Of a stretch of DNA of 64,000 bases, positions 3,049 to 64,000 are shown piece after piece. Every line of letters starts with the position of its first letter. Position 1 is the first letter of the stretch. Origin of the DNA: Macrostomum lignano. Lineage: Eukaryota. The stretch spans positions 98,517 through 162,516 of the forward strand of contig NIVC01001909.1 in NCBI GenBank assembly GCA_002269645.1, given 5' to 3'. The notes beneath the pieces are model-generated. The model saw only the letters and a list, made by a program, of their open reading frames with translations. It was not told the DNA's origin and ran no database searches. Both the position numbers and the translations under genes were made by a program.

Positions 3049-3072
3049 CTGGAAGGGATTGACAAATACGGA

Positions 3073-31666: not shown

Positions 31667-31680
31667 TGGCGACGAGGATG
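31667..31680 (+). promoter_or_regulatory. Primer-binding site TGGCGACGAGGATG
   Basis: 1 nt after the 5' LTR. Complementary to the 3' end of animal tRNA-Ser(GCU) as I recall it (...CATCCTCGTCGCCA). Its last 3 nt are the gag ATG. Confidence 0.75.
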
Positions 31681-37408: not shown

Positions 37409-37410
37409 TA

Positions 37411-38727
37411 TCACGCAGTTGGGGAATCGTTGAGCAGGTCATCCTCCTCCTTTTCAGTGGTGGGTGACCCGCAGACCTCCATGGGAGTTTCAGCGTCCTC
37501 AGCAGTTAGGGTGGCTGTGGAGTCCTCCGCGGACGTGAGCCCAGCGTGGACGTTATCGCCGCCTCCCCTGCGTGCTTCGGTGCTGTCACTACCCGTCCCC
37601 TCTGCCTCGTCGGTCAGGTCGATGCGGGTGGCGCCAGCCTCCTGGTGAGTCACAGACTCGAACCAGTCGGTCGGAGCCTCCCCGCTTAGAGTCTGGCCTT
37701 CTGGCTGTTGGGGTGGAGCGCGAGAAGCGCGGGCCCGCTCACGATGCGCACGAAGGTTTTTGGCCTGGTCCAGCGCGCGCTGGATCAGGCCGGACCTCCG
37801 GGTGCTCCTGGCGGGTCTGCGATTGCGATTTCCGGTTTCAGCAGCGCGAACTGCCTTACCGGGCATAGGATCGGCCGTTTGCCTCGGCTTCTTTGCCGGA
37901 GGAGCCTGGGCCCCAGTTTCGGTTTCGGAAGCTTAGGCATTCTTGGCTTCATCAGCTTTCCGCTCCTCGCAACGGAGGATGGTCAGCTGAGTCAGACCAA
38001 TATGAATTGTGGACTTAGGCGGCAAGCGCTTAGCCCAGTCATCAGAGAGCCCTAGGATCACCGTAGCCCCCTTCTCCTTGCGGGAAGTGGCGTGGTGAAG
38101 GAGCCCGTTGACCTCAAGGTCGGGGTGCAGCTTTAGCAATATTTGCCTAAGCTGATCTCCGGACTTAATGGCACTGCCGGCCGGGATCCAGACGCGAAAG
38201 CGCTGGGTCTTTTGTCGTTCGCCCTCGCTGGCGAAGACGAGCTTGCCGAGCTTCTTGGGCCAGTTCAGCTTTGGCAGAAGCTCGCGTAGATTGCGGCTGC
38301 TCTCCTCCGAGCTGCACCAGATGAAGATGCAGCCGTCGGTCTTGGCAGACTTGACCACGCTCCCAGGGCGGCCCGCCAGGAGCTGGTCGATGAGCGCAGC
38401 ATCGATGGTGCGCCAGGCACTGTCGAGCTCGTCGGCCGTGAGGTCCTGCTCTTCCCCGAAGACGATGACCGCCGGTTGGAGCTTGACCTTTGAGGCGTAG
38501 TTGGTGGCGGCGGTTCCCGAAGGCCCAGCCGCGCTTGTAGCAGGTATACTGGGTGGCTCACCAGCGGGGGTTGTATCCTGGGGGGCAGGGGTTGCTGTGG
38601 TTCCTTTCGGCCCAACAGCGGCCTCGCCCTCCCTAGGTTCCCCCTCCGCCGGTGGCCGGCCCGCAGTACCCCGTAGTCGCCGTCGCCGCTCGTTGCGGCG
38701 TTGGTTGCGGGTGCGTCGGGCCTCAGC
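37411..38727 (-). pseudogene. LINE ORF1 (gag-like), 5'-truncated, with in-frame TAA at 37933-37935
   Basis: Track ORFs 37933..38751 and 37411..37866 are in the same frame, separated by one TAA plus 22 open codons. TGA ends 2 nt before the ORF2 ATG at 37408. Confidence 0.75.
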
Positions 38728-39269: not shown

Positions 39270-39595
39270 TTGATAATCATTTGGGGATCACATGGCATTT
39301 GGGATAATCATTTGGGGATCACATGGCATTTGGGATAATCATTTGGGGATCACATAGCATCTGGGATAATCATTTGAGGATCACATGGCATTTGGGATAA
39401 TCATTTGGGGATCACATAGCATCTGGGATAATCATTTGGGGATTACATAACATCTGGGATAATCATTTGGGGATCACATAGCATCTGGGATAATCATTTG
39501 AGGATCACATAGCATCAGGGATAATCATTTGGGATTTTAGCATCAGGTAGAATCATTTGAGGATCACATAGCATCTGGGATAACCATTTGGGGGA
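39270..39595. repeat. ~31-bp minisatellite related to the 24985-26443 array
   Basis: GATAATCATTTGGGGATCACATAGCATCTGG units in the next intron. Confidence 0.9.
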
Positions 39596-39780
39596 TTGAA
39601 ACATTACAAACCCTTTGAGCCGTTAACGACATTAATCCGTGAATTTCATGGGAAATCAAATTTACTATCAGCTTGATAAATCTAACCGACATTTGACTAG
39701 GCTAAATTAACTACCAAAGTACATCTTCAATCGATTCAATTAATAAGACAAAACTCAACAAAACTTCAAAACATTTCCAG

Positions 39781-40024
39781 TCTACCCAGTCTCCTTCCTC
39801 GGCAGCGTCAGCGTGGAATCCCTCGTTGGCAGCGAAGCCGTCACCAGAGCTGTCAGCTTGTTGCTGGGAGCGGGGATCGACCCCAGTCTGAACTCGGCTG
39901 ACTGTCAGCTAAGAGTCGAACCTGAAGCTCTGATCCTCACCGACCAACAGCGGAAGCAATTCTTCCGCAAGCACTTTCCTTTGTCAGCGATTCTGCACTG
40001 CGGATTTGACGGCTTGAATAGAAG
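39781..40024 (+). CDS. TNS: Tensin-like protein, exon 8 (PTB domain, first part)
   Basis: Acceptor atttccag, donor GTGAGA at 40025. FLGSVSVESLVGSEAVTRA...LILTDQQRKQFFRKHFP matches the tensin PTB (ESLTGPQA...ITLTDNQRKLFFRRHYP). Confidence 0.9.
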
Positions 40025-40044
40025 GTGAGAAGGTCTGCTTTGCA

Positions 40045-41700
40045 AAGTTAGTGTCCATTTGGCGCCAAAGTTAGTGTCCAGTTGGCGCCAAAGTTAGTGT
40101 CCAGTTGGCGCTAAAGCTAGTATCCAGTTGGCGCTAAAGTTAGTGTCCAGTCGGCGCCAAAGTTAGTGTCCAGTCGGCGCCAAAGTTAGTGTCCAGTTGG
40201 CGCTAAAGCTAGTATCCAGTTGGCGCTAAAGTTAGTGTCCAGTCGGCGCCAAAGTTAGTGTCCAGTCGGCGCCAAAGTTAGTGTCCAGTTGGCGCCAAAG
40301 TTAGTGTCCAGTTGGCGCCAAAGTTAGTGTCCAGTCGGCGCCAAAGTTAGTGTCCAGTCGGCGCCAAAGTTAGTGTCCAGTTGGCGCTAAAGTTAGTGTC
40401 CAGTCGGCGCCAAAGTTAGTGTCCAGTTGGCGCCAAAGTTAGTGTCCAGTTGGCGCCAAAGTTAGTGTCCAGTTGGCGCTAAAGCTAGTATCCAGTTGGC
40501 GCTAAAGTTAGTGTCCAGTCGGCGCCAAAGTTAGTGTCCAGTCGGCGCCAAAGTTAGTGTCCAGTTGGCGCTAAAGCTAGTATCCAGTTGGCGCTAAAGT
40601 TAGTGTCCAGTCGGCGCCAAAGTTAGTGTCCAGTCGGCGCCAAAGTTAGTGTCCAGTTGGCGCCAAAGTTAGTGTCCAGTTGGCGCCAAAGTTAGTGTCC
40701 AGTCGGCGCCAAAGTTAGTGTCCAGTCGGCGCCAAAGTTAGTGTCCAGTTGGCGCTAAAGTTAGTGTCCAGTCGGCGCCAAAGTTAGTGTCCAGTTGGCG
40801 CCAAAGTTAGTGTCCAGTTGGCGCCAAAGTTAGTGTCCAGTTGGCGCTAAAGCTAGTATCCAGTTGGCGCTAAAGTTAGTGTCCAGTCGGCGCCAAAGTT
40901 AGTGTCCAGTCGGCGCCAAAGTTAGTGTCCAGTTGGCGCTAAAGCTAGTATCCAGTTGGCGCTAAAGTTAGTGTCCAGTCGGCGCCAAAGTTAGTGTCCA
41001 GTCGGCGCCAAAGTTAGTGTCCAGTTGGCGCCAAAGTTAGTGTCCAGTTGGCGCCAAAGTTAGTGTCCAGTCGGCGCCAAAGTTAGTGTCCAGTCGGCGC
41101 CAAAGTTAGTGTCCAGTTGGCGCTAAAGTTAGTGTCCAGTCGGCGCCAAAGTTAGTGTCCAGTTGGCGCCAAAGTTAGTGTCCAGTTGGCGCCAAAGTTA
41201 GTGTCCAGTTGGCGCTAAAGTTAGTGTCCAGTCGGCGCCAAAGTTAGTGTCCAGTTGGCGCTAAAGCTAGTATCCAGTTGGCGCTAAAGTTAGTGTCCAG
41301 CTGGCGCCAAAGTTAGTGTCCAGTTGGCGCCAAAGTTAGTGTCCAGCTGGCGCTAAAGTTAGTGTCCAGCTGGCGCTAAAGTTAGTATCCAGTTGGCGCT
41401 AAAGTTAGTGTCCAGTTGGCGCCAAAGTTAGTGTCCAGTCGGCGCCAAAGTTAGTGTCCAGTTGGCGCCAAAGTTAGTGTCCAGTTGGCGCCAAAGTTAG
41501 TGTCCAGTTGGCGCTAAAGTTAGTGTCCAGTTGGCGCTAAAGTTAGTGTCCAGTTGGCGCTAAAGTTAGTGTCCAGTTGGCGCTTAAGTTAGTGTCCAGT
41601 TGGCGCCAAAGTTAGTGTCCAGTTGGCCCTTAAGTTAGTGTCCAGTTGGCGCTAAATTTAGTGTCCAGTTGGCGCTAAAGTTAGTGTCCAGTTGGCGCCA
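40045..41700. repeat. Intronic 23-bp minisatellite (GTTAGTGTCCAGTTGGCGCCAAA)
   Basis: About 70 units with higher-order variant blocks, filling intron 40025-41741. Confidence 0.97.
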
Positions 41701-41741
41701 GTTAATCCAGCTCAACTCCATATAATCCAACACAACCGCAG

Positions 41742-41937
41742 GCTTGGCAACCGCAGCCTATACGGCCTGGTAGTTCGGGCTGGTGCTCGAGCTGATAACT
41801 TATGCGTGGTTCTCAGCGACGTTGAACCTGGAGCGCCCAGTCAGAGTGCCTGGCAACAACAGCCAACTGCTCAGCTGGTGATAGCGGTTGTTAACCAAGC
41901 TCTACTAGGAGCAACTGCCAACGGTAGGATGCGATGA
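41742..41937 (+). CDS. TNS: Tensin-like protein, last coding exon (PTB C-terminus)
   Basis: Acceptor caaccgcag. LYGLVVRAGARADNLCVVLSDVEP corresponds to tensin LFGFVARK..TDNxCHLFAELDP. Ends at TGA. Confidence 0.85.
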
Positions 41938-43699
41938 GCATGCACTTATAGTAACTGGATTGGACATCTAACCTTGCATACTACTAATAGTAAAGCTTGG
42001 TTCCTACCTCTGAATTAACTAATCATGCCGACATTGAAATGATAACCAAAAACAATATTCACAAGGCTAAACCTGTGTGTTTATCGTGCTCATTTCATCC
42101 AATAAGTTTATTTAAAAGCAGCCAACAAATTTTGTTTTAATTAAGTCACTTGTTCTTATTCATTAATTACAATAATTACGACCAAAGTTTGCATAAACCT
42201 TTTATAGAATAACTATAAAATATAATTGTATAATACTTTGTAAGAAAAGATATGAAAAGCAGGAAAATATAAAATATTATAGATAAAAATACTAGAATAA
42301 ATAAATTTTAGAGAAAATATTTCTTTATTTTTTGCACTAAATAGCTATAAGGTTTATACAATCTTTGATTCTTACTAAAGTTTTAGTCCGCAAAAAAATT
42401 TAAATATCAAATCAGGGTTGTACAGGACAGAATAAAAATAGAAAAACCTACTTGTAAGCTGTTTTGTTATTTCTAATTGACGATTTAAAAAGTAAAACAA
42501 AATAAACCGTTTCCTTTATCATTACTCGCGCACTGGTGTAATGGACCGTTTAAGTGCTTATTTTTGCGCTATGCAAAAAGTGAAGTAATTGTTGCTAAAA
42601 ATAAACAATTTCTCTGAGACAATTTCCGTAGACAATAATTTTGTTTCACTTTTTTCTCGACAAGAAGCTCAATAAGTACTTATCCTGCAGGTGGGAAGTA
42701 GTGATTTCACTCAGTGCTAAAAGAACCGAAAACTTCCAATCTCGCGAATTATTTTTCGATCTCTGTTTTAGAATGATTAATTGTCCACAAGTTTTGCGCA
42801 TAAATTGATCAGCGCGGTATAAGAAATTTTGGAGCATTAGATAAACATTTGATTCTGTCCACTTAAAGCGCATCATTCCTTGGCTAATCAATACAAGGGA
42901 TCTGAACCAATCCTACATTTGATTTGAGCAATTTTGCTCGCATTTGTAGGCTGTAACTAATAAGTGTAAATTTGTCTTTAGTTTATCTTGTACAACCCAG
43001 ACGAGACGGTCAAACATTAAAATTTTTAGTCTTCATTTTAAAAACTGTCGCATGGATCAAGCCTACTGGCAATGTTTCTAATTGCTACACGCAGATAACG
43101 ATTAGGCCCAAATCCCGGGATCACCCTTGTCCGGGATTCGAAAATCCCGGGATTGACAATCGGGATCTCGATCCCGGTTTGCAATAATTCAATCATTCAT
43201 TCTCGAGTAGTACTTGTAGTATCTGCAGCTGAGCTACTTGTCAGGTGAAAATCGTAACCCAGTTGTCCTGCTTCGATTTATTAATCTTTTAAGCATGCAG
43301 GCTAGTGAGACTGAGAAGGCTGGGGCTGCAGGGATACAAAACTGAAGCTGTTGGCAGATCGTAAGGAGATTTCAGGTGTAATAATGTACGTGCAACTGTA
43401 TGCATACGGTACTCGCAGACTAATGTAATTATTATTCTAAAATCTGTACACAGAGCCTAAAGCAATAGAAGCCAATCTCTCATTGTTTCCGATCACAGAG
43501 CTATACATGTAGCTCGCCAGACGGGAGTCAAATAATTGTGAATTTGAACTCTCCCTCTATCTCAAACCCAGCTAAAATCAAGGGGTCTCGACCTTGCGCA
43601 GATCAGAAGCCCCCTATGCGAAAGACATCATTCTCAGCACTGTCAGTCCATACCTTCAAAACTCCTTGGCCGTAGTAGGGATTAGAACAGTGGGACCTG

Positions 43700-44735
43700 G
43701 CTATCGGACCACAACCCAAGCTACCAGTTCTCCATCTGGGGCGGGTGCTATCGGAACACAACCCAAGCTACCAGTTCTCCATCTAGGGCGGGTGCTATCG
43801 GACCACAACCCAAGCTACCAGTTCTCCATCTAGGGCGGGTGCTATCGGACCACAACCCAAGCTACCAGTTCTCCATCTAGGGCGGGTGCTATCGGACCAC
43901 AACCCAAGCTACCAGTTCTCCATCTAGGGCAGGTGCTATCGGACCACAACCCAAGCTACCAATTCTCCATCTAGGGCGGGTGCTATCGGACCAAAACCCA
44001 AGCTACCAGTTCTCCATCTAGGGCAGGTGCTATCGGACCACAACCCAAGCTACCAGTTCTCCATCTAGGGCGGGTGCTATCGGACCGCAACCCAAGCTAC
44101 CAGTTCTCCATCTAGGGCGGGCGCTATCGGACCGCAACCCAAGCTACCAGTTCTCCATCTAGGGCGGGTGCTATCGGACCACAACCCAAGCTACCAGTTC
44201 TCCATCTAGGGCGGGCGCTATCGGACCGCAACCCAAGCTACCAGTTCTCCATCTAGGGCGGGTGCTATTGGACCACAACCTAAGCTACCAGTTCTCCATC
44301 TAGGGCGGGTGCTATCGGAACACAACCCAAGCTACCAGTTCTCCAGCTAGGGCAGGTGCTATCGGACCACAACCCAAGCTACCAGTTCTCCATCTAGGGC
44401 GGGTGCTATCGGACCACAACCCAAGCTACCAGTTCTCCATCTAGGGCAGGTGCTATCGGACCACAACCCAAGCTACCAGTTCTCCATCTAGGGCGGGTGC
44501 TATCGGACCGCAACCCAAGCTACCAGTTCTCCATCTAGGGCGGGTGCTATCGGACCACAACCCAAGCTACCAGTTCTCCATCTGGGGCGGGTGCTATCGG
44601 ACCACAACCCAAGCTACCAGTTCTCCATCTAGGGCGGGCGCTATCGGACCGCAACCCAAGCAACCAGTTCTCCATCTAGGGCGGGTGCAATCGGACCACA
44701 ACCCAAGCTACCAGTTCTCCATCTGGGGCGGGTGC
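43700..44735. repeat. 47-bp minisatellite inside the composite repeat
   Basis: GGGCGGGTGCTATCGGACCACAACCCAAGCTACCAGTTCTCCATCTA, about 22 units. Single copy at ~58475-58515 in the sister element. Confidence 0.96.
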
Positions 44736-47418: not shown

Positions 47419-48759
47419 ATGGCAGGTGCCGGTAATTGGCCTCGAGGTCAAGAAGTTCGCCACCAACAATTTGAGGTCGGTCAGGGCCGCAGGTTCTCTG
47501 ATTGCAGAGGACGATACGATTCTAGCGGCCGCGGCAGAGGTCGAGGAGGCGACGGAAGGACGTCAGCACCACGGGAGAACATGAAAAATCAGAAGGCAAA
47601 CTGGAATTTTAGTACTCTACTGTGCGGCCCTGCCGACTCGCAGATTGTGTTTACTGAATACCAAGGCTTTTGCTATCAGAAGGCTAAAGAACTTCGCGAT
47701 AAAGGTCATATTCATGTGCCCCTTTTTCGGACGACGACTGACGAAGAAGTGTGTCAGAATTTTCGAGAAAAGCTACGTTCGATCACAGCATCCATGACCG
47801 AATGCAAAGATTTGCTCAATGAAAATTGCCAATTGAGAGCTTTTATCCGGGTCGGAGATCTGTACTTCAATCACAGAAGCTTCCGGTTTGACAGCCGTCC
47901 TGGACCTCAGCTTAGAGACTTCGGCGATCTACTAGAGTCAGACAAGTTCGAAGAAGCGTCACAACGATTGGACAGATTTTTCAATCCCGACAAAGAAGGA
48001 TTCTACCGGCGGCGTCCAATTACCTCAACATTCGTGACTGATAAAACCGTGGCGAATCATGCCCTGCTGGAGGTGTTTCTCAGCATGCGAGACTTTGAGG
48101 AAGTCAGGGACGACAGCGAAAAAGACGCGATTCTCACCGTTACATTGAACAAAGATCAGAAAAAATTTGAGCTCATCTACGACGCGAAAAATCTGGTATT
48201 GGACTCTGTGATGCTGATCACTAGCAAATGGAATCTAAACATGGTCACAGCAAAGGGTACCAATTACCAGGGCTCATTTAACGAGGTCGCCGACTTCAGA
48301 CTGCAGTTCGAAGCTTCATTTCCCAGCGACACGGAGGAGGTCAATGAGAGCTTGGCTGCCGAAGGATTCAACAAAGAAGACCTGCAGCAGTTGTTCGAAA
48401 GGATCGGCGAGGCACCGCCTGCCTCAGATTTGTTGTCGGATGGCTCCGAGAGGCACTATCGGCTGAAAAGTCTGCCGCAATTGGCAGAGAAGCTGGAATA
48501 TCTTCGCGAGCAGTCTAATAAAACCTTTGTGCGGCATCACGACCGATGGCCACTTCATGTGCGGCTTCGGCAGTTCAAATTCTACAAGCTAGTAAATCCC
48601 GTGGCTGGCGTGTTACATCCGCTGCCCGGGGTCGAGCTGCGGGTCAGCGCTGAGCTGGGCTGCTCCTTGGACACGGAGGTCCTTGGCGATCGGGAGTTCG
48701 CGAGCTACATGTGGGAGTGCTGCCAGCTGATGCAGGACCTGGTGGCCGCTTCGCTGTAG
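47419..48759 (+). CDS. Uncharacterised intronless protein, short paralog (446 aa; RG tract plus ~390-aa globular region)
   Basis: Long open ORF. The core is near-identical to 60798-62747 and the 5' and 3' flanks are also duplicated (~47040-49022 vs ~60480-63007). No domain recognised. Confidence 0.85.
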   Translation: MAGAGNWPRGQEVRHQQFEVGQGRRFSDCRGRYDSSGRGRGRGGDGRTSAPRENMKNQKANWNFSTLLCGPADSQIVFTEYQGFCYQKAKELRDKGHIHVPLFRTTTDEEVCQNFREKLRSITASMTECKDLLNENCQLRAFIRVGDLYFNHRSFRFDSRPGPQLRDFGDLLESDKFEEASQRLDRFFNPDKEGFYRRRPITSTFVTDKTVANHALLEVFLSMRDFEEVRDDSEKDAILTVTLNKDQKKFELIYDAKNLVLDSVMLITSKWNLNMVTAKGTNYQGSFNEVADFRLQFEASFPSDTEEVNESLAAEGFNKEDLQQLFERIGEAPPASDLLSDGSERHYRLKSLPQLAEKLEYLREQSNKTFVRHHDRWPLHVRLRQFKFYKLVNPVAGVLHPLPGVELRVSAELGCSLDTEVLGDREFASYMWECCQLMQDLVAASL

Positions 48760-49029
48760 GCTTGACTCGTTTGTTGAGAGTCGGCCGGACTATTGAAGAA
48801 GTTCGATGTTTGTTTTCAATGTGTTTTCGACGATTATCTATCTTTCTATAAAATCTATGTTCTACAAATTTATTGAAAGCCACAGCGTCATGTCGTTTTT
48901 ATTTGAAGCAGTCTGCTCCTTGAACGCTATGCTCATAAATGCATATGGAATATTGGCGTATATGAGAACGTCCATTATTGAAGCATAGCACAAATTTTAA
49001 CTCTGCTTTACAACTTAGTTTTGTTAAGA

Positions 49030-49225
49030 GCTAGTGAACCCCGTGGCTGCCGTGTTACAGCCGCTGCCCGGGGTTGAGCTGCGAGTCAGCACTGCATGAT
49101 CTGGGCTGCTCCTTGGACCCGGAGGTCCTTGGCGATCCGGAGTTCGCGAGTTACATGTAGGAGTGCTGCCAGCTGATGCAGGCTCTGTGGTGATGCGACT
49201 CTCAACTCGTTCGTTGAGAGTCGGT
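49030..49225 (+). pseudogene. Degenerate tandem fragment of the 3' end of the same gene
   Basis: Aligns to 48588-48790, with indels and TGA/TAG stops. Confidence 0.8.
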
Positions 49226-49889
49226 CGAACTATTTTCACTAAATTTGACCTACTCCTCATCCTGTTTTTTAATCTTCTCGTTTTCCTTCAATATTCTGAG
49301 GTAACGTTCTTTATTGTCTATTTTAATTGTTCTCATCTTAATTCCGTAAACTAACAAATCACTGCACGGTGTTTTCAGATTTTACAGTTTATTTCTGGTG
49401 TATACGAGTAAGCCGGTTTTACGCTCGTGTAATTCTATCATTCCATGTGTCCGAATGTTTATCTTTACTTCTGCCATAATCCACTTAACATCCGTTTGAA
49501 GCCGACGAAAGTAAAATGGTAGAAAAAAATTTACCTACATTTTCCTATACTTCTCCTATGCCTAATTAGCCCGTAATGTGCGATTTTTTAGCAGTTAATA
49601 TCGGAGCGTGAAGAGGAGGGGTTGAATTTATTTGTTATGTGTTATTTCTGTTTTAAAATTGCTATTTAGAGGGCAGTTGTAGGCATGGCAGGGTTCAGAA
49701 ATTAGCTCGTACGAGAATATTACGCGCATAGTTCGCGTGAGCTCGATGTGGATTATTCACCTGCAGCTGATAAATTTGTTTTAATTCAAATAAACTTGTG
49801 TGCATATTTATCAAGTAAAATAACTCCGTCTCACAGTGCGCAACCAGAATTTTTATGAGGGGCGCTGGGGCGGGAGGACAGGAGGATCG

Positions 49890-50135: not shown

Positions 50136-51404
50136 TCTTTATGACTTGGGTGGGGCGACGGAAGAGAGGAAGCATGCCTTAAGGCTTCAATTTTTGTGCG
50201 CTTCGAAACCAACTCTCTTAATTAATTAAAAGGTAAAGGGAACTAAGCTGTGCATACAGGTGTGACGAATAAAGGCGGGTTTTGTGTAGCGGGTAATTAG
50301 ATAGTTCACGATTTAGTTTAGCAGATCGGCAGGCCGCTTCCAGTGTTGCTTACTTATAGTGTTGCTTAAGACAGCTTAGATTTAGATATATAGAAAAATT
50401 GCTAGGATCGGGATCAGATGATTAAATAATTGGGCCGAGGTAGGCGGCGGAAGAGTTGAGGCAAGGAGGCCGGATAACTAAGGGGTTCGCGAGCCTAGAG
50501 CGAGAAGCGAAGCAAAGAGGGAGGGTAGGGCGAGAGCGGCCGCTGACTGTAGTGTAAGCATATATTTTAATTGCTAGGTAAACAGATAACAAAATCACCC
50601 CCCAATCCGAAACTCAGACAAACCCCCCACGCGCAATGTACATGTACAAATTAATCGATAAAATATATCGTGCAAGAATATCATAACGTCAGTGCATGTA
50701 CATAGATAGAACTACTTTACGAGAAATAATAACGATATGAATGAAATACAAATAATAGAATGAATACATACGAGGCTACAAAAAATAAGGCACTTAACAG
50801 TAACGGAAGCGCGATAATAATACGTATGGAATATTGTTAAAATAAATGAAAGAATACAGTAGTAGTACGGTATGCAAGTGAGATAAAGAAATACGATACA
50901 GATGCTTCTACGAAATTACGAATTACACTTTCACACAGGGATTCTAGGGATTTCGGAGTACATTTCCTATTCATATTTACGACCTCGATCTTATTTAGGG
51001 AGAAATTGGCAAGAATCGATATATGAAGTAGGTTTCCTGCAATCTCAATCTACCTTTTATAATAGTGCTTAATGCTCCGTAAGATATTACTTTTAGTAGT
51101 TGGTTTTGTATACTAATCCCACAGCCAATCCCCGAATTTCTATGCTTTTGTTTGAATGTTACCTTATTGTTTTAATTTTTGGTTTGTTATAGGTCCCGGT
51201 ATATTTTGTTTAATTGTGCTGCTCCCATCAATAGCCAGCCCACCTATGATCCCTCGAAAAATTCCATATAAAGGCGCTAGCTGAAGCCGAAATAGACCAG
51301 AACTCTTTAAACTCTCTCGGTGAGCTCGAGTGATTTATCTACCAATTTGATTAGCTTTAAGAAAAATTCTGCTAAAGGCTTACCTGTCAGTTCTTTATTA
51401 GGGA

Positions 51405-52042
51405 AATACCGAGGTCTTGGAGACCCAGAGTAGGAATCTGGAATAGGGAGTTATCGAGGTCGTAGAGACCCAGAGTAGGGATCTGGAATAGGGAGTTATC
51501 GAGGTCGTAGAGACTCAGAGTAGGGATCTGGAATAGGGAGTTATCGAGGTCGTAGAGACCCAGAGTAGGGATCTGGAATAGGGAGTTGTCGAGGTCGTAG
51601 AGACCCAGAGTAGGGATCTGGAATAGGGAGTTATCGAGGTCGTAGAGACCCAGAGTAGGGATCTGGAATAGGGAGTTGTCGAGGTCGTAGAGACCCAGAG
51701 TAGGGATCTGGAATAGGGAGTTATCGAGATCGTAGAGACTCAGAGTAGGGATCTGGAATAGGGAGTTATCGAGGTCGTAGAAACCTCGGAATAGGGAGTT
51801 ATCGAGGTCGTAGAGACTCAGAATAGGAATCTGGAATAGGGAGTTATCGAGGTCGTAGAGACCTCGAAATAGGGAGTTATCGAGGTCGTAGAGACTCAGA
51901 ATAGGAATCTGGAATAGGGAGTTATCGAGGTCGTAGAGACTCAGAATAGGAATCTGGAATAGGGAGTTATCGAGGTCGTAGAGACTCAGAATAGGGATCT
52001 GAAATGGGGAGTTATCGAGGTCGTAGAGACTCAGAATAGGGA
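51405..52042. repeat. 45-bp minisatellite (GAGTTATCGAGGTCGTAGAGACCCAGAGTAGGGATCTGGAATAGG)
   Basis: About 14 units. Confidence 0.95.
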
Positions 52043-52543: not shown

Positions 52544-55113
52544 TGTTATGCCAACCATTATCCTAGGCAGAAAAGTATTCGGCTGAATAACTTTAGATGC
52601 GTTATTTTATCTGGGCCCAGATTGAATACGGCACGACATAAGTCGTGCCAAGCGCACTCCTAGGCTGATTTCTCTCTGGGGTTTACGAGATTAAAAACCT
52701 GTGAATAATCAGTTTAAGCTGTGGTTGGATATCACCTACGTCTACATGAACACTGTCAAAGTTTTTATAGCCGCGCATTCTCGTCTGCAAGTCTGTTGAC
52801 AAGATTTTAAAGTCCTCTGACTTTCAGTACACCGAAATCTATGCAGTATACGTACAATTGTACATGTTGTTACGCAATACGTTGCCTATAAATAACTGAA
52901 AGTTTAAATATCAACTACACTGGACTTCGTGCACTTGGCTTCCTTATTTTGAGATACTAATACATAAACATGTCTGTTGCGTATTCCGACATAAAACTTT
53001 ATTTGCTTAGTGGCGCATACGACGTCCCTGTGTCTTTAACAACAACTAAGGAGAAGAATAATTTCAAAAGAAAGGTTCGGCAAAAGGCGCGCAAGTTCAA
53101 GTACGAGGGCCAGCAGCTGTTCTATCAGCTCTCAGCTCGGGATGATAGTCAGAAGAAGCGCCATCGGTCAAGGGAGCGTCGCCTGGAGGTTGAAGAACAA
53201 GAAGAACGGAGTCGATTAATTCAAGAGTATCACACCTCTGCGACTGGAGGAGCTCATCAGGGGATAAAGTCCACCCTATCGAAGCTGCAGGGACGATTTC
53301 ATTGGGACGGCATGACGAAATCTGTGCAAGATTACGTTCAGAAGTGCGCCGTCTGCCAGCGCAACAACAAGAGGGCCGTGGCGAACGAACCCCAGTTGAC
53401 GCCAATTTTGATTCCTTCGATGGCCGAACGAGTATTCGGTTTTGTCTGCGTTGACTACGTCAGGTTCGAGCCATCTTCGAAAGGTGATTGTTTAATCGAT
53501 TAATAGCTTTTGTGGCCACGTGTATCAAATCTAAGTAGCATACTCTCATTCATTTTAATGTAAACTTAACAACACAATGCTCCACAGGGAATCAATACCT
53601 GCTGACGATTTGCTGCAAATTTACCAAATTTGCCCTGGCGTCAGCGCACAGCAGGAACGATGCACTTACAGCCGCAGAACAGCTGTACAAGGCCTTCTGC
53701 GTCTTCTCCTGGCCCGACATCTTGTTGACCGATCAGGGACGAGAGTTCAACAACAATCTGATAAGCTACCTGTCTGAGATGATTGACAAGAGACGAACCT
53801 CTGCTTATCACCCCCAGGTTAGTAAAGTTAATATTTTTTGCCTTCCATGCTCTCAGTAATAAGTCTTAATTCGAATAAGTTCATATTCGATATTAAAGAA
53901 CTGACAATGCTCTTTCAGACCAACGGTCAGTGCGAGCGCCTCAACCAGAGCTTAGTCGCAGCTCTGCGCAAAATGTGCGACCAGGACTCTGACTCTGCGG
54001 CATGGGACGATTATGTCGATGGCGCAGTTCTGGCGTACAACAGTCGCGTGCACTCGACAACTGGCGTCTCGCCTTACAAGGCCGTGTTCGGCAACGAACC
54101 ACGACTTCCCCATGACAGCATCGGACCAGCAGACGCTGCCATGGTCGGTGACGTCACGATTCGTCATGTAGAGAGAAAGTCCGAAGCACGTGGGCGGACC
54201 ATTGAGTTGATGCGTCGACGCATCCGTCGGGCGCAGCAAGCTATGCAGCAGTACCATCAGCAGCGTCTGGCGTCTGCCAGCAGCCTCAGCTTCAAAGTCA
54301 AGGTGCGGCAGACAAGGTGCTGCTGCGGAACTTCGTCCGTGACGATCGGAAAGGCGGCAAATTGAAGACACCATGGTGCGCCAAGGTTTACACGGTCGAA
54401 CGTGTCCTAAGCAACAACCTGTACCGACTCGAGGGGAGATCTACATCGATCAATGGCCGCCACCTGAAAAAATACCACGAATAGGTGATTTACAGAATTT
54501 GAATTTCTAATATTTGAAAGTAGCTTTAGGCTCCTAATTAAAATAATCGTTGCACAAGATCAAAATGCTTGATATGAACGAAAGACTTGACTCAGTAGAA
54601 ACTTTGAGCTTTAAAGCAATGTACACTTAATGGAAGATCTAGAAAGTAGGACTTAAACGATAAGGAAGTTTGATAATTCAACATATGCTCGTAATTTCTT
54701 TGCGCATATTTGAAAATGTGCAGGATTTATTTTAAGGACTGTCTAAATTAGCAATTTACGGATAAATTATTTTTCATAATTCATAACCTTTCATATTTTT
54801 CATATTTCATAGCCTTACAATACGAGCGTATTATAAAGTTTTATAATTTACATAATTTATTTAGTTTTGGATTGCTCTTGTCTTTTTTGTAGCAATATGC
54901 ACTTTACAGTAATAATTTATTGTCTACTTGCAAAGTTGTCGGAATATTTTAAGACGAATAAAATAAGGCATACGATAGTTTCTGCTCAGTGAGTGAGAGA
55001 ATTCAAGATGGTCGAATGAGTTTGGATAAATGAAAAGTATTTGGCCAAATACGTCTGTCGTCTTATTTCATTCAGCCGAATAAAACAACGCAGAAATTTT
55101 TTAAGACGTGACA
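52544..55113 (+). mobile_element. Ginger1-type (gypsy-integrase-related) DNA transposon
   Basis: Termini TGTTA...TGACA, 4-bp CCGG on both sides (52540-52543, 55114-55117). Inverted 13-mer TATTCGGCTGAAT about 32 bp inside each end. Encloses a GIN1-like integrase gene and has no RT or LTRs. Confidence 0.8.
52970..54484 (+). CDS. Ginger transposase/integrase, 3 exons (52970-53483, 53588-53817, 53919-54365/54484), late frameshift
   Basis: GIN1-like N-terminus (KRKVRQKARKFKYEGQQLFY), HHCC (YH..GAHQG...CAVC), DDE (CVDY, LTDQGREF, GQCERLN). GT-AG introns of 104 and 101 bp restore KGNQYLL and SAYHPQTNG. A frameshift near 54300 separates the last ~55 codons (DKVLLRN...INGRHLKKY). Confidence 0.88.
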
Positions 55114-59101: not shown

Positions 59102-60305
59102 GCGATAGATAATAGAAAAAAACGGCTCAACCGATTTTCACTAAACTTGCACCATTCGATCAGAAATTCTCCATGACGGTACATGGCTCGTGACTAAAAA
59201 ATTGCTCAATGCTAAAGGGATTCAATAGTCGAAAAACATGCATTTTTGCAAAGGTCAAGTAAAGTTTTCGACTTGAAATGCATTGTAAGAATGCTAGAAA
59301 AAAATGACAGACTGAAATTTGATTCTGATAAAGATTACATCACAACAAACTTTTTACTTATTGTCGTTTTTTTACATGCATGGCTGAATGTTCACACTGA
59401 CTTGAATTGCACAAGGGACGCAAGGCTTACAGCTGAGGGAATTTCTGGAATCTCAAGGCTCATTGGGGAATTGCTCAGATGTCCTGGCTTACTGTGGAAT
59501 TGCTGGGATGTCGAAGCTTATGGGGAATTGCTGGAATGTCAAGGCTTACAACTGGGGGAATTGCTGGGATGTCAAGGCTTGCAGCTGGGGGAATTGCTGA
59601 GATGTCAAAGCTTATGGGGAATTGCTGGGATGTCCAGGCTTACAGCTGGGGGAATCGCTGGGATGTCAAGGCTTACAACTGGGGGAATTGCTGAGATGTC
59701 CAGGCTTACTGGGGAATTGCTGGGATGTCAAAGCGTATGGGAATTGCTGGGATGTCAAGGCATATGGGGAATTGCTGAGATGTCAAGGCTTACAGCTGGG
59801 GAAATTGCTGAGATGTCCAGGCTTACTGGGGAATTGCTGGGATGTCAAGGCTTACAGCTAGGGAAATTGCTGAGATGTCAAGGCTTACAACTGGGGAAAT
59901 TGCTGAGATGTCCAGGCTTATTGGGAAATTGCTGGCATGTCAAGGCTTATGGGGAATTGCTGGGATGTCAAGGCTTACAGCTGGGGGAATTGCTGAGATG
60001 TCAAGGCTTGCAGCTAAGGGAATTGCTGAGATGTCAAGGCTTGGTGGGGAAATTTTTTAGACTTCAAGGCTTAGCTGGGGGAATTGCTGAGATGTCCAGG
60101 CTTACAGCTGAGGGAATTGCTGAGATGGCTAGGCTTACTGGGGAATTGCTGGGTTGTCAAAGCTTATGGGAATTGCTGGGATGTCAAGGCTTACTGGGAA
60201 ATTGCTGAGATGTCAAGGCTTAGTGGAAGCATGGCTCTATTCTTTAATATTTTAGCAATATTTTCATTTACCTTTTTGCACTCCCCGAACGGGCTGGATT
60301 GCTAG
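58996..60305 (+). mobile_element. Probable non-autonomous Helitron with (GTCT)n and ~27-bp satellite
   Basis: 5' TCTATATATCTAAA followed by (GTCT)n (59017-59101). 3' CCCGAACGGG hairpin, then GGATTGCTAG|T. Internal array GGGAATTGCTGAGATGTCAAGGCTTA (59430-60230). Confidence 0.65.
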
Positions 60306-60797
60306 TATACACTAAAAGATTGAGACATGGTGTTGCTAATTAATTAGTCATTCGCTAGCAGATCCAATAGCCCCGTTCGCCACTAGTCTGCCAAGAAAAA
60401 CAGTCATTTAGAAAAGACAAAAAATAGGCCACCACACAACAAAAAAACTTGATGTATATAGTATTCATCATCAAAAACGAGTCTTGCAACTGTTCCAGTG
60501 TATCTCGTACAACTCCACCCGCCAGTGTACGAGCGTACATTTCCCTCGCGAGGCAAACGGGGGGGAGGAAGAAGTGCTTGCTGGACTAGTGTACTTTTTA
60601 TTCTCTCTCCAGATTGACTGTACGGGTCACGCTAAAATATTTCTTGGAAATACCCAGTGCCTCCCAAATGAATAGAAAAAGCCGAAAACGAAAACTATCG
60701 GCTCTTTAAGTCAGGACCTCAATTAATGTAAGACTGAAAAGTTTATTTAGAGCCTAAAAATCCTGGTTAAGCAGCTTACTACCGATACGAAAAGCTT

Positions 60798-62747
60798 ATG
60801 GCAGGTGCAGGTAATTCGTTCGATTCCGACGACGAAGGCGAGTGGCACACGGTCTGGAAGGGCAGTAAGAAGAAGCGCCAGGCCGAATCTGAGACGGTCG
60901 AAAATTGGGCTCGAGGTCAAGGAGTTCGCGACCGACAATTTGAGGACGGTCGGGATAGCAGTGTGAGTACCAAATCTTGGCGCCAAATACAGATCAGCTG
61001 CGATGAGCAACATCAGATTCGTCCCGGGTCCAAATTTTTTCAGCGTGGTAATAGCGAGAGAGGCTCCAGCAGAGGCGGAAGTCGTGTCGGAGCTCGAGGC
61101 GGATGGGCCAACCGCGACAACGACAATGGAAGCTCCAGAGATGACTACAGAAGCAGTGGCGGTCGTGGAGGTCGTGGCCGATGGGTCAACCGCGACGGAG
61201 ATAGTGGGAGTGCCAGAGACGACTCCAGGAGCGGTGGTGGTCGAAGAGGTCACGGGGGATGGGCCAACCGCGACGGAGATAGTGGCAACGCCAGAGAAAC
61301 CTTCAGAAGCGGTGGCGGTCCTGGAGGTCGTGGCCGATGGACCAACTTTGACTGTGACAATGGGAGCTTCAGAGACGACTTCAGAAGCGGTAGCAGTCGT
61401 GGCGGTCGTGGCTCGTGGCTCAACCGCGGCGGCGAAAATCGAAGAGCCAGAGCCAACTTCAGAAACGATTGCGGCAGCATTGAGTATAGAGGTAGACACG
61501 ATTCCAGAGGCCGCGGCAGAGGTCGAGGAGGCGACGGAAGGACGTCAGCACCACGGGAGAACATGAAAAATCAGAAAGCAAACTGGAATTTTAGTACTCT
61601 ACTGTGCGGCCCTGCCGACTCGCAGATTGTGTTTACTGAATACCAAGGCTTTTGCAATCAGAAGGCTAAAGAACTTCGCGATAAAGGTCACATTCATGTG
61701 CCCCTTTTTCGGACAACGACTGACGAAGAAGTGTGTCAGAATTTTCGAGAAAAGCTACGTTCGATCACAGCATCCATAACCGAATGCAAAGATTTGCTCA
61801 ATGAAAATTGCCAATTGAGAGCTTTTATCCGGGTCGGAGATCTGTACTTCAATCACAGAAGTTTCCGGTTTGACAGCCGTCCTGGACCTCAGCTTAGAGA
61901 CTTCGGCGATCTGATGGAGTCAGACAAGTTCGAAGAAGCGTCACAACGATTGGACAGATTTTTCAATCCCGACGAAGAAGGATTCTACCGGCGGCGCCCA
62001 ATTACCTCAACATTCGTGACTGAGAAAACCGTGGCGAATCATGCCCTGCTGGAGGTGTTTCTCAGCATGCGAGACTTTGAGGAAGTCAGGGACGACAGCG
62101 AAAAAGTCGCGATTCTCACCGTTACATTGAACGGAGAGCAAAGAAAATTTGAGCTCACCTACAACGCGAACAATCTGGTATTGGACTCTGTGATGCTGAT
62201 CACTAGCAAATGGAATCTAAACATGGTCACAGCAAAGGGTACCAATTACCAGGGCTCATTTAACGAGGTCGCCGACTTCAGACTGCAGTTCGAAGCTTCA
62301 TTTCCCAGCGACACGGAGGAGGTCAATGAGAGCTTGGCTGCCGAAGGATTCAACAAAGAAGACCTGCAGCAGTTGTTCGAAAGGATCGGCGAGGCACCGC
62401 CTGCCTCAGATTTGTTGTCGGATGGCTCCGAGAGGCACTATCGGCTGAAAAGTCTGCCGCAATTGGCAGAGAAGCTGGAATATCTTCGCGAGCAGTCTAA
62501 TAAAACCTTTGTGCGGCATCACGACCGATGGCCACTTCATGTGCGGCTTCGGCAGTTCAAATTCTACAAGCTAGTAAATCCCGTGGCTGGCGTGTTACAG
62601 CCGCTGCCCGGGGTCGAGCTGCGGGTCAGCGCTGAGCTGGGCTGCTCCTTGGACACGGAGGTCCTTGGCGATCCGGAGTTCGCGAGCTACATGTGGGAGT
62701 GCTGCCAGCTGATGCAGGACCTGGTGGCCGCTTCGCTGGAGGATTGA
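60798..62747 (+). CDS. Uncharacterised intronless protein, long paralog (649 aa; 26-aa RG/Trp repeats plus conserved globular region)
   Basis: Long open ORF. 78-bp repeats with Trp codons at 61104, 61182, 61260, 61338 and 61416. C-terminal ~390 aa shared with the short paralog. Confidence 0.87.
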   Translation: MAGAGNSFDSDDEGEWHTVWKGSKKKRQAESETVENWARGQGVRDRQFEDGRDSSVSTKSWRQIQISCDEQHQIRPGSKFFQRGNSERGSSRGGSRVGARGGWANRDNDNGSSRDDYRSSGGRGGRGRWVNRDGDSGSARDDSRSGGGRRGHGGWANRDGDSGNARETFRSGGGPGGRGRWTNFDCDNGSFRDDFRSGSSRGGRGSWLNRGGENRRARANFRNDCGSIEYRGRHDSRGRGRGRGGDGRTSAPRENMKNQKANWNFSTLLCGPADSQIVFTEYQGFCNQKAKELRDKGHIHVPLFRTTTDEEVCQNFREKLRSITASITECKDLLNENCQLRAFIRVGDLYFNHRSFRFDSRPGPQLRDFGDLMESDKFEEASQRLDRFFNPDEEGFYRRRPITSTFVTEKTVANHALLEVFLSMRDFEEVRDDSEKVAILTVTLNGEQRKFELTYNANNLVLDSVMLITSKWNLNMVTAKGTNYQGSFNEVADFRLQFEASFPSDTEEVNESLAAEGFNKEDLQQLFERIGEAPPASDLLSDGSERHYRLKSLPQLAEKLEYLREQSNKTFVRHHDRWPLHVRLRQFKFYKLVNPVAGVLQPLPGVELRVSAELGCSLDTEVLGDPEFASYMWECCQLMQDLVAASLED

Positions 62748-64000
62748 CTCGTTTGTTGAGAGTCGGCCGGACTATTGAAGAAGTTCGATGTTGTTTTCAA
62801 TGTGTTTTCGACGATTATCTATCTTTCTATAAAATCTATGTTCTACAAATTTATTGAAAGCCACAGCGTCACGTCGTTTTTATTTGAAGCAGTCTGCTCC
62901 TTGAACGCTATGCTCGTAAATGCATATGGAATATTGGTGTATATGAGAACGTCCATTATTGAAGCATAGCACAAATTTTAACTCTGCTTTACAACTTAGT
63001 TTTGTTACTTTGATTAATATTTTGGCTCTCATTTAATAAAATCGAGCAGTTTTCAGCCTGTTGTTTTTATTGTCTGTTCAAATTGTATATTGTTTGATTA
63101 TTGTATCATTATTATTACGATAGTATGAGCATAAGAGTTCCTCTTATACTCCTTTGAACTGTGTTTCAGCCGTATTTCGTGTAGATAAGCCGGTTTAATA
63201 TCCATGTAATTTAATTAAGTTTTCTTTCTGTCATTAATCGATGTTTATTAACAGTATAGACTATAGTGTCTACAAATACAGTTCATTTGAAAAAACTTTT
63301 TCGGAAATATACTTACAGCATTATAGTTCTGACTTTGTAGTTTATAGCTATGTTTCGATTGATAACTTGAGTTTTTTCAGTTTCAGATGTGCGCTCTTCT
63401 ACCGTAAAACAGCCAGCGATACATATAAAGTGCTGTTTACAGTTTTGCTGTAATTTTAGCTAAGCTAATACACCATTTTACCCTCGATTTTGAACGAGGA
63501 GAACTTCGAAACCGACAAACTCCTCTTCAATATTGACACTCTATGGTCGGGCACTCAAAATCTACAATCAATATTGACAGATCAAGCTTCAATTTTGACA
63601 AACTCTGGTTCAATTTTGACAATACACATTTAGTCAACTTCTCCCTGGGAAAAATCGATAACAAAGTAATCCAATGAAAGCCTGAACGGGCGAAAGTTAT
63701 CTGTGCAAATCAGCTCATTCTGACCTTGCTTTTGGGATCTACAAGTATTGATAAAAAAATTTTCTCCATCCTCTTACACACAGAGACTAAAATAGCCTGA
63801 CTGTTGGGCGCAAAATCCGATTCTATTTTGACAGAGTTGCTTCAAAACTGACACTCTATGGTTTGTGTACCCCGAAAGTCCGCTTCATTTTTGACAACTC
63901 CTAATCAATATTGAACAGTTTACAATCAGTTTTGACTGCTACCTTATTACATCTGTTCTTGTTGTGTATGTTTCAGAAAAAGCCGTAAACAAGTAGCATT

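What the first reader, a model, noticed from the sequence alone, without database searches (positions are those of the whole stretch)
60798..62747. Unknown intronless gene family with RG/RGG plus Gly-flanked Trp repeats: candidate small-RNA or germ-granule factor
The N-terminus has 4.5 copies of a 26-aa repeat, each with one Trp in a Gly-rich context (GGW, GRW, GGW, GRW, GSW) and RGG/GRG motifs. It is followed by a ~390-aa region I cannot assign. RG tracts are established methyl-arginine/Tudor ligands (PIWI, Vasa) and Gly-Trp repeats are established Argonaute hooks (GW182), so a role in RNA silencing or condensates is a testable hypothesis. The gene is intronless and repeat-free, unlike the other host genes here, and recently duplicated amid transposons.
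Basis: partly seen in the sequence, partly recalled or inferred. Interest (0 to 1): 0.72.

Follow-up and report, generated by a model that had tools for sequence, protein, structure and literature searches.

The report
Flatworm orphan gene with RG/Trp repeats
This is a real, transcribed gene found only in Macrostomum flatworms, encoding a protein with an arginine-glycine-tryptophan repeat tail and a conserved domain of unknown fold; the proposed small-RNA or germ-granule role could be neither supported nor excluded.

Summary
The ORF at 60798-62747 (+) is real. It is Macrostomum lignano BOX15_Mlig022533g2; the window is the last 64 kb of contig NIVC01001909.1. The 78-bp/26-aa repeat is confirmed: five units, Trp exactly every 26 residues. 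Arg2, Trp13, Asn15 and Arg24 are invariant across all 11 units of this gene and its homeolog. The gene is not intronless. An 81-nt in-frame GTGAGT...TTTTTTCAG intron (60963-61043) is spliced out in the transcript-derived GenBank models, so the product is 622 aa. Those models also show the gene is transcribed.

The 403-aa C-terminal domain is under purifying selection (dN/dS 0.17-0.28). It has no detectable relative outside Macrostomum (profile HMMER against 1.84 billion representatives, Pfam, PDB). Two AlphaFold attempts failed (pLDDT 33 and 44), and Foldseek returned noise. CYTH and GTF2I-repeat leads were rejected.

A second copy (47419-48759) lacks all Trp repeats but keeps an (RG)4 tract.

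The Argonaute-hook idea rests on composition only. The published WG/GW score does not separate this region from Trp-free RGG controls, and Arg content (18-22%) is far above that of true GW domains (4.4%).

Most likely this is an RNP-type protein with an RG-rich disordered arm and a lineage-specific domain. Its function is untested. About 35-45% of M. lignano genes are lineage-specific, so orphan status alone is ordinary.

The parts
60461..60797 (+). Conserved 5' flank / putative promoter and 5'UTR, including a polypyrimidine-AG (ttctctctccAG, 60601-60612) that could be a cis- or SL trans-splice acceptor
   Evidence: 94.6-97.8% identical to the homeologous locus L002. Blocks are also conserved in the old W2 copy. 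The splice-acceptor role is inference only.
60798..60962 (+). Coding exon 1: acidic 55-aa leader MAGAGNSFDSDDEGEWHTVWKGSKKKRQ..., with a KKKR basic patch (60867-60878) that resembles a monopartite NLS
   Evidence: The same N-terminus is annotated in P0001, P0003 and P0005. The NLS reading is inference from the K-K/R-X-K/R consensus.
60963..61043 (+). 81-nt intron, GTGAGT...TTTTTTCAG, in frame and stop-free (could also be retained)
   Evidence: The 27 codons are absent from the transcript-derived protein models of this locus and of the homeolog. It is 93.8% identical between homeologs.
61044..62747 (+). Coding exon 2 through the TGA stop (62745-62747). The spliced product is 622 aa.
61068..61457 (+). 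Five tandem 78-bp / 26-aa units, consensus SRSGGGRGGRGGWANRDGDNGSSRDD; strongly basic disordered region (pI 11.6, 26% Gly, 22% Arg)
   Evidence: TRF 61089-61464; the repeat finder 61059-61448. Unit analysis: R2, W13, N15 and R24 are invariant in 11/11 units of W1 plus the homeolog. Units are 65-80% identical within the array and 81-96% identical between orthologous units. pN/pS is 0.5-0.7.
61506..61529 (+). (RG)4 tract RGRGRGRG immediately before the C-domain
   Evidence: It is retained in the repeat-less W2 copy and in the homeolog. A Gly/Arg-rich stretch is also seen upstream of the domain in the other-species contig L001.
61536..62744 (+). 403-aa acidic (pI 5.2) C-terminal domain of unassigned family; low-confidence models suggest a helical first half and a beta-sheet plus long terminal helix in the second
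   Evidence: dN/dS 0.17 against L001 and 0.28 against the homeolog. About 60% identity to P0002 with long invariant blocks. No Pfam, PDB or HMMER relatives. AF2 pLDDT 33 and 44. Foldseek gave noise.
63035..63040 (+). AATAAA polyadenylation signal about 290 nt after the stop
   Evidence: Sequence read. Function inferred from the canonical consensus.
47419..48759 (+). Paralog W2: 446-codon open frame lacking the leader's basic patch and all five Trp units, but keeping the (RG)4 tract and the full C-domain; not annotated as a gene
   Evidence: The 3' part has dS 0.03 against W1, while the 5' 45 codons have dS of about 0.9. This suggests gene conversion or a chimeric origin. The exact sequence is not in the protein collection.
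49029..49234 (+). Dead fragment of the gene's last ~55 codons plus the start of the 3'UTR, with TGG->TAG
59421..60226 (.). 33/94-bp satellite directly upstream of the gene, also present (longer) at the homeologous locus

Best explanation
Shown: this is a genuine, transcribed protein-coding gene restricted, as far as current data can detect, to Macrostomum. It is BOX15_Mlig022533g2, and the GenBank model is wrongly truncated. It has two coding exons split by an 81-nt intron and encodes a 622-aa bipartite protein.

Inferred mechanism: the N-terminal ~220 residues are an intrinsically disordered arm with three parts: an acidic leader with a KKKR nuclear-import-like patch, five 26-aa Arg/Gly/Asp units each presenting one invariant Trp, and an (RG)4 tract. 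This arm would provide multivalent, probably arginine-methylation-tunable contacts with RNA and/or RNP proteins. The acidic 403-aa C-terminal domain, which is the part under clear purifying selection, would supply the specific and still unknown activity or partner binding. In short, it most likely works like an RGG/GAR-type RNP protein, in which a disordered RG arm delivers a folded module to RNA-protein assemblies. Which assembly (nucleolar, nuclear or cytoplasmic granule) is not determined.
For: Gene reality. The ORF and coordinates are confirmed. There is identity to NIVC01001909.1. Transcript-derived models exist at three loci. The intron is canonical. An AATAAA signal follows the stop. 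The 5' flank is conserved.

Selection. C-domain dN/dS is 0.17-0.28, against 0.54 for the N-terminal part. There is a ~60%-identical homolog in another sample, with long invariant blocks.

RG arm. It is 26% Gly and 22% Arg with pI 11.6, 17 RG dipeptides, 5 tri-RG motifs and an (RG)4 tract. R, W, N and R are invariant in 11/11 old, diverged units. The frame is preserved with no indels across 376 bp.

Background knowledge. RG/RGG regions are established RNA-binding and PRMT-substrate modules (FET proteins, fibrillarin, nucleolin, Sm tails, Vasa/PIWI N-termini).
Against: No experiment or expression profile was available. The gene IDs were absent from every held supplement I could search, and one key table was truncated on storage. 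The repeat number is labile: 5 here, 6 in the homeolog and 0 in W2. The array as a whole is only weakly constrained (pN/pS 0.5-0.7). Strict RGG triplets are few and there is no di- or tri-RGG motif. The C-domain has no known RNA-related fold because no fold could be obtained. RG-rich composition alone is a weak predictor of function.
Confidence: 0.5

Rival explanations
1. The Gly-flanked Trp act as Argonaute/PIWI 'hooks', and the RG tracts, once symmetrically dimethylated, act as Tudor ligands. The protein would then be a small-RNA-pathway or germ-granule (chromatoid-body) adaptor.
For: Trp is invariant in all 11 units, sits in a disordered Gly/Ser/Asn/Asp-rich context, and is spaced 26 residues apart. 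From general knowledge of GW182-Ago structures, that spacing is compatible with two-pocket binding. The (RG)4/GRG tract is conserved in all copies and resembles sDMA-type Sm and PIWI tails. Lineage-specific genes are over-represented among M. lignano germline-enriched genes, 48.5% against 35% overall (PMC5816591).
Against: The evidence is compositional only. The published WG/GW score cannot tell this region from Trp-free RGG controls. Arg is 18-22% against 4.4% in true WG/GW domains, and Trp is 3-4% against 6.3%. Only 2 of 5 Trp are GW dipeptides. There are no GW182-family domains (UBA, PAM2, RRM). The same published scan flags many unrelated glycine-rich proteins. The W2 copy has dropped all Trp units while keeping an open frame. 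No germline or neoblast expression evidence was found.
Confidence: 0.15
2. The Trp/RG repeat is a largely neutral coding minisatellite expansion in a disordered linker, in a genome that expands minisatellites everywhere. On this view all the function lies in the C-terminal domain and perhaps the (RG)4 tract.
For: The window holds more than 20 minisatellite arrays, including one directly upstream. Copy number differs between homeologs, 5 against 6, and three homeolog units are 96-99% identical recent duplicates. W2 lacks the array yet keeps an open frame. pN/pS among units is 0.5-0.7, and N-terminal dN/dS is 0.54 against 0.28 for the C-domain.
Against: The units are old (65-80% identical), yet no indel or stop has broken the frame over 376 bp. 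Four positions, including Trp (a single-codon residue), are invariant in 11/11 units. Orthologous units are individually conserved between homeologs at 81-96%. W2 is unannotated and may simply be a non-functional copy.
Confidence: 0.25
3. The gene belongs to, or was recently captured from, a mobile element or endogenous virus. The grounds are that it is nearly intronless, multicopy, surrounded by transposons and lineage-restricted.
For: It has a single tiny intron, against about 5 per average M. lignano gene. It has several full or partial copies. LINE, Gypsy and integrase sequences are nearby.
Against: Neither copy is flanked by terminal inverted or long direct repeats. There are no transposase, RT, integrase or capsid domains. 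No viral structural match was found, although the model was weak. Upstream synteny with the homeologous locus is conserved over about 9 kb. The GenBank 'coregenes' set excludes repeat-overlapping transcripts. The copy number matches polyploidy plus one local duplication.
Confidence: 0.05

Closest known systems
RGG/RG (GAR) disordered regions of RNP proteins (fibrillarin, GAR1, nucleolin, FET proteins, Sm D1/D3 (GR)n tails, Vasa/DDX4 and PIWI N-termini)
   Same: A Gly/Arg-dominated, disordered, strongly basic segment with clustered RG dipeptides. It has 17 RG, five tri-RG motifs and an RGRGRGRG tract, attached to a folded domain. It is a plausible PRMT substrate and RNA or Tudor contact surface (general knowledge).
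   Different: The aromatic residue is a strictly periodic Trp rather than Phe or Tyr. Each unit also carries an acidic half (NRDGDNGSSRDD), which makes it a polyampholyte. There is no di- or tri-RGG motif. The attached domain is not a methyltransferase, RRM, helicase, Sm or PIWI module. This is similarity of composition, not homology.
WG/GW Argonaute-binding platforms (GW182/TNRC6, plant NRPE1 and SPT5L/KTF1)
   Same: Repeated Trp in a disordered Gly/Ser/Asn/Asp-rich context, with little else conserved. It has a positive 'dos' score (89-137 half-bits) on the Karlowski 2010 matrix.
   Different: Arg is 18-22% against 4.4%, and Trp density is about half. Only 2 of the 5 repeat-unit Trp (4 of 6 in the homeolog) are GW dipeptides, and no WG occurs. 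The score is matched or beaten by Trp-free controls. There are no UBA, PAM2 or RRM domains, and no polymerase or SPT5 body. Argonaute binding is untested.
DRYG-rich region of eIF4B (Asp/Arg/Tyr/Gly self-association and RNA/eIF3-binding region)
   Same: From my own knowledge: a low-complexity polyampholyte of Asp, Arg, Gly and an aromatic residue (for example ...RDDYR...). Plant eIF4B proteins are themselves picked up by the WG/GW compositional scan.
   Different: There is no RRM and no sequence homology. The repeat here is a regular 26-aa unit with Trp. This is a recalled resemblance only and was not tested.
Macrostomum-specific orphan genes (e.g. the class discussed with Mlig-sperm1 and the Mlig-stylet genes)
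   Same: It has no homolog in human, Schmidtea or Schistosoma. It belongs to the 35-45% of M. lignano genes classed as lineage-specific (PMC5816591).
   Different: Mlig-sperm1 (Mlig020950) is conserved in other free-living flatworms and is a different gene. No phenotype or expression pattern is known for Mlig022533 or Mlig021245.

Membership tests
WG/GW Argonaute-hook platform (GW182/TNRC6, NRPE1, SPT5L) | Multiple GW/WG dipeptides in a disordered region | tested here: inconclusive
   There are five periodic Trp, but only 2 are GW (4 of 6 in the homeolog); the rest are RW or SW, and no WG occurs.
WG/GW Argonaute-hook platform (GW182/TNRC6, NRPE1, SPT5L) | Characteristic composition: W, G, N and S enriched; R, E, aromatic and aliphatic residues depleted (Karlowski 2010, Table 1) | tested here: not met
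   G, S, N and D fit. R is 18-22% against 4.4%, and W is 3-4% against 6.3%. The dos score of 89-137 does not discriminate: (RGG)n scores 195 and the Trp-to-Ala consensus scores 150.
WG/GW Argonaute-hook platform (GW182/TNRC6, NRPE1, SPT5L) | Trp-dependent physical binding to the Argonaute PIWI-domain pockets | not testable with these tools
   This needs pull-down or ITC with wild-type and Trp-to-Ala repeat peptides.
GW182/TNRC6 family proper | UBA, Q-rich, PAM2 and RRM silencing-domain architecture | tested here: not met
   No Pfam domain at E<=1 on the full protein or at E<=10 on four family members.
RGG/RG-motif (GAR) proteins | Clustered RGG or RG repeats (tri-/di-RGG, or tri-/di-RG with spacers of 0-4 residues) | tested here: met
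   Five tri-RG motifs including RGRGRGRG, and 17 RG dipeptides. Di- and tri-RGG motifs are absent.
RGG/RG-motif (GAR) proteins | Arginine methylation and RNA or Tudor binding through the tract | not testable with these tools
   This needs methyl-arginine mass spectrometry or antibodies, CLIP, and Tudor pull-downs.
   CYTH is absent from the hmmscan lists at E<=1 and at E<=10 for four members. There is no PDB hit by sequence or profile. The low-confidence models are largely helical in the first half. The fold itself could not be tested (pLDDT 33-44).
GTF2I-like repeat | Profile-level similarity to GTF2I repeats | tested here: not met
   The PDB profile hit 2eje_A has only E=1.6. hhalign of the family alignment against five GTF2I repeats gives probability 0.7%.
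Transposon- or virus-encoded protein | Terminal repeats, mobile-element enzymatic or capsid domains, high dispersed copy number | tested here: not met
   No TIR or LTR around either copy. No such Pfam domains. No BFVD match at E<=0.001 (with a weak model). Only 3 annotated loci plus 1 local copy were seen. A whole-genome copy count was not possible.

The most novel reading that the evidence does not exclude
The periodic Arg/Trp unit (invariant R-W-x-N-R frame every 26 residues) plus the (RG)4 tract could be a new kind of dual 'hook' that recruits both Tudor-domain and PIWI/Argonaute proteins. The conserved 403-aa domain could be a new fold that carries out a Macrostomum-specific step in germline or neoblast RNP biology, for example in chromatoid bodies.
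Probability: 0.1. Interest if true: 0.65.

Novelty: new variant of a known kind. Interest (0 to 1): 0.3.

Why it matters
If the RG/Trp arm really engages Argonaute/PIWI or Tudor proteins, this would be a lineage-specific adaptor in a transgenesis-capable flatworm model for stem-cell and germline biology. It would also be an example of a silencing or condensate component arising de novo through minisatellite expansion. Its C-domain would be a new protein family.

As the evidence stands, it is one of many thousands of Macrostomum-specific genes with an RG-rich disordered region. Three practical results hold regardless. First, the GenBank models for Mlig022533.g1 and .g2 are truncated, and the true product is about 622 aa. 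Second, the gene has an intron. Third, composition-based 'GW hook' calls are unreliable in Arg/Gly-rich sequence.

Tried and rejected
1. CYTH/tunnel fold: no Pfam or PDB support.

2. GTF2I-repeat lead, from the only PDB profile hit (E=1.6): hhalign probability 0.7%.

3. AlphaFold2 on the 403-aa domain and on its last 219 aa, with the only four sequences available: pLDDT 33 and 44, unusable. Foldseek against PDB and BFVD gave no hit at E<=0.001. The best match was SecB at TM 0.19-0.29 and RMSD 9-17 A, which I treat as noise.

4. Exhaustive profile HMMER over 1.84 billion representatives: only the family itself, plus P0004 (E=8e-4). P0004 is a repetitive secreted-type protein matching one ~40-aa helical motif through its own repeats, so I judged it chance.

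5. Search with the N-terminal module: only self.

6. Internal duplication of the C-domain: none.

7. Karlowski WG/GW 'dos' score: computed, but shown non-discriminating by Trp-free controls.

8. Expression class: the IDs Mlig022533 and Mlig021245 were not found in the main text of any held paper. They were not found in the held supplements of PMC5816591 (table truncated), PMC7336406, PMC5730564, PMC12896417 or PMC5946080. PMC8629364 and PMC12801592 have no supplements held. SRR28338164 is not mentioned anywhere.

9. Mobile-element origin: no terminal repeats.

10. The 187-aa alternative-frame and 250-aa antisense ORFs over the repeat: by-products of a stop-poor GGN/CGN/GAC repeat, not genes. 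Only the annotated frame continues into the conserved domain.

11. The bacterial promoter/terminator scan is irrelevant for a eukaryote and was ignored.
Full report
**What is there**

The window's ORF at 60798-62747 (+), 649 codons, exists exactly as described. The last 13.2 kb of the window are 100% identical to the end of Macrostomum lignano contig NIVC01001909.1 (assembly GCA_002269645.1, Mlig_3_7). The gene is therefore BOX15_Mlig022533g2 / PAA62700.1. A near-identical locus, g1 on NIVC01001096.1, is 99.86% identical over 13.2 kb and differs by 4 nt in the gene. A homeologous locus, Mlig021245g1 on NIVC01000732.1, is 88-98% identical from the 5' flank through the CDS and has the same upstream satellite. 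All are annotated only as 'hypothetical protein'.

**Gene structure**

The gene is not intronless. The annotated proteins of this locus (P0003, P0005) and of the homeolog (P0001) all lack the 27 residues VSTKSW...SKFFQ. In the DNA these are the 81 nt at 60963-61043, which begin GTGAGT and end TTTTTTCAG. The segment is in frame and stop-free in both homeologs, which explains why a reader of raw sequence saw one uninterrupted ORF.

The GenBank models of Mlig_3_7 are derived exclusively from RNA evidence: a de novo transcriptome plus RNA-seq, with repeat-overlapping transcripts removed (Wudarski 2017, PMC5730564). The models therefore show both transcription and splicing. One tiny intron is still few compared with the ~5 introns of the average M. 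lignano gene.

The spliced product is 622 aa. The 373-aa GenBank proteins for g1 and g2 result from an extra 19-nt gap without GT/AG ends after ...FFNPDEE. The genomic frame is open to the end in all loci, so those models are truncated artefacts.

A polypyrimidine-AG at 60601-60612 is conserved in all three copies and may be a splice or trans-splice acceptor; this is inference. AATAAA lies at 63035-63040.

**The N-terminal arm**

TRF reports a 78-bp period, 4.8 copies, 74% matches and no indels at 61089-61464. In register there are five 26-aa units (61068-61457) with Trp at spliced residues 76, 102, 128, 154 and 180. The homeolog has six units.

The units are old, at 65-80% nucleotide identity within the array. 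Orthologous units pair up between homeologs at 81-96%. Three homeolog units are recent duplicates at 96-99%. Arg2, Trp13, Asn15 and Arg24 are invariant in 11/11 units, while pN/pS across units is 0.5-0.7. This amounts to position-specific constraint within a weakly constrained array.

The segment is 26% Gly and 22% Arg, with pI 11.6. It has 17 RG dipeptides, 6 RGG triplets, five tri-RG motifs and no di- or tri-RGG motif. An RGRGRGRG tract lies at 61506-61529. The 55-aa leader is acidic and contains KKKR.

**The C-terminal domain**

Residues 220-622 (61536-62744) are acidic, with pI 5.2. The domain is about 60% identical to P0002, a protein from a 1.2-kb Logan contig of run SRR28338164, and shares long invariant blocks with it. 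Nei-Gojobori dN/dS is 0.17 against that contig (dS is saturated at ~1.8) and 0.28 between homeologs. The N-terminal part gives 0.54.

Pfam gives nothing at E<=1, and no weak family is shared by more than one of four members at E<=10. PDB sequence and profile searches give nothing significant. A profile HMMER search of 1.84 billion cluster representatives finds only the family itself and one chance hit. There is no internal duplication.

AlphaFold2 with the four available sequences failed on both the whole domain and its last 219 aa (pLDDT 33 and 44). Foldseek returned only TM<0.3 matches. The CYTH guess and a GTF2I-repeat lead were both rejected. The domain remains an unassigned, selectively constrained family.

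**Copies and context**

A second open frame, W2 (47419-48759, 446 codons), is 97.8% identical to the gene over 1521 nt, including 260 nt of 3'UTR. It lacks codons 7-35 of the leader and the whole repeat array, and keeps only the (RG)4 tract and the C-domain. Its first 45 codons are highly diverged (dS ~0.9) while the rest is nearly identical (dS 0.03). That pattern suggests gene conversion or a chimeric origin. W2 is not in the protein collection.

A dead 3' fragment with TGG->TAG follows at 49029-49234. An integrase remnant lies between the copies. Further upstream, a Gypsy element with 98%-identical LTRs is nested inside a LINE ORF2. Neither gene copy has terminal repeats. The window is packed with minisatellites.

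No expression class could be retrieved for these IDs.

I applied the published compositional matrix for WG/GW Argonaute-binding domains (Karlowski 2010, PMC2910046). The best segment scores 88.6 half-bits here and 137.4 in the homeolog. A Trp-free (RGG)55 control scores 195 and a Trp-to-Ala consensus scores 150. Glycine therefore drives the score, and the test cannot discriminate. Arg (18-22% against 4.4%) and Trp (3-4% against 6.3%) depart from genuine platforms. Only 2 of 5 Trp are GW dipeptides. That paper's own scan also flags many unrelated glycine-rich proteins.

The (RG)4/GRG tract, conserved in every copy, is the feature most like known sDMA/Tudor ligands. This remains a resemblance only.

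**Interpretation**

Shown:
- The gene is real, expressed, spliced and lineage-restricted.
- It encodes a constrained orphan domain and a periodic RG/Trp disordered arm.

Inferred, with confidence about 0.5: it acts as an RNP-type protein whose RG arm contacts RNA or RNP partners and whose C-domain provides specificity.

Rivals:
- A specific Ago/PIWI-Tudor germ-granule adaptor (0.15).
- A functionally neutral coding minisatellite, with all function in the C-domain (0.25).
- A mobile-element origin (0.05).

Between 35% and 45% of M. lignano genes are lineage-specific (PMC5816591), so orphan status alone is not remarkable.

**Verdict**

The interpretation remains an untested hypothesis supported only by weak compositional evidence. 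Interest is modest (0.3). The decisive work is RNA-seq mapping, an orthologue census across Macrostomum transcriptomes to enable structure prediction, and standard in situ hybridisation, RNAi, transgene and pull-down experiments in laboratory M. lignano lines.

Noticed in passing
window 61981-61999 (approx.), GenBank models PAA62700.1 / PAA72380.1: The annotated CDS of Mlig022533.g1 and .g2 is truncated to 373 aa by a 19-nt gap (GGATTCTACCGGCGGCGCC) that lacks GT/AG ends. The genome encodes the full 622-aa spliced protein. This is probably a transcript-mapping artefact or a deletion-bearing transcript from another copy.
   Followed up: partly
window 28218-37414 (LINE, minus strand) and 31364-35909 (LTR element): A Gypsy-type LTR retrotransposon is inserted inside a LINE ORF2 and separates the LINE's endonuclease (35942-37414) from its RT (28218-31319). 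The Gypsy element has 248-bp LTRs at 31364-31611 and 35662-35909 (98% identical) and an RT-RNaseH-integrase ORF at 31666-35634. This is a young nested insertion.
   Followed up: partly
window 59421-60226; L002 ~7600-9436: A 33/94-bp satellite lies directly upstream of the gene. It is conserved in position, but about twice as long, at the homeologous locus. It yields a spurious 320-aa ORF (59246-60208).
   Followed up: partly
window 60461-60797 versus L002; window 62748-63040: The 5' flank and 5'UTR are 94.6-97.8% identical between homeologs, which is higher than the CDS. Similarity ends about 30 nt after the stop codon, and the 3'UTRs are unrelated. In contrast, W1 and W2 share the 3'UTR up to 63007.
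   Followed up: partly
window 47419-47553 versus 47554-48759: The W2 paralog is mosaic. Its first ~45 codons are very diverged from both W1 and the homeolog (dS ~0.8-0.9), while the remainder is almost identical to W1 (dS 0.03). This suggests gene conversion of an older copy, or that W2 preserves a pre-expansion, repeat-less form.
   Followed up: partly
window 49029-49234: This is a fragment of the gene's last ~55 codons plus the start of the 3'UTR, 84-92% identical, with an in-frame TGG->TAG. It is a dead partial third copy immediately after W2.
   Followed up: yes
window 52970-54365: A degraded retrotransposon integrase (H2C2 zinc finger and rve-core motifs spread over two ORFs) lies between the two gene copies.
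   Followed up: no
window 1-26500, 39272-44735, 51399-52042: Minisatellite and microsatellite density is extreme, with more than 20 arrays. Examples are a 16-bp unit x99 (152-1791), a 20-bp unit x68 (3073-4435), (ACAG)169, (ACT)251, (ATAG)160, a 23-bp unit x72 (40043-41700) and a 47-bp unit x22 (43700-44735). Several of them generate long spurious ORFs.
   Followed up: no
L001 1-165: In the other-species Logan contig, the frame upstream of the conserved domain contains two in-frame stops (RG*GGGGGMRGRRGGGRN*SWNF...). The cause could be an assembly error, an intron, or a truncated or decaying N-terminus in that species; this is unresolved.
   Followed up: no
window 1852-3087 (minus strand): A 411-aa ATG-initiated ORF lies between two satellite arrays and has no Pfam match. 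Its nature (host exon, transposon or chance) was not examined.
   Followed up: no
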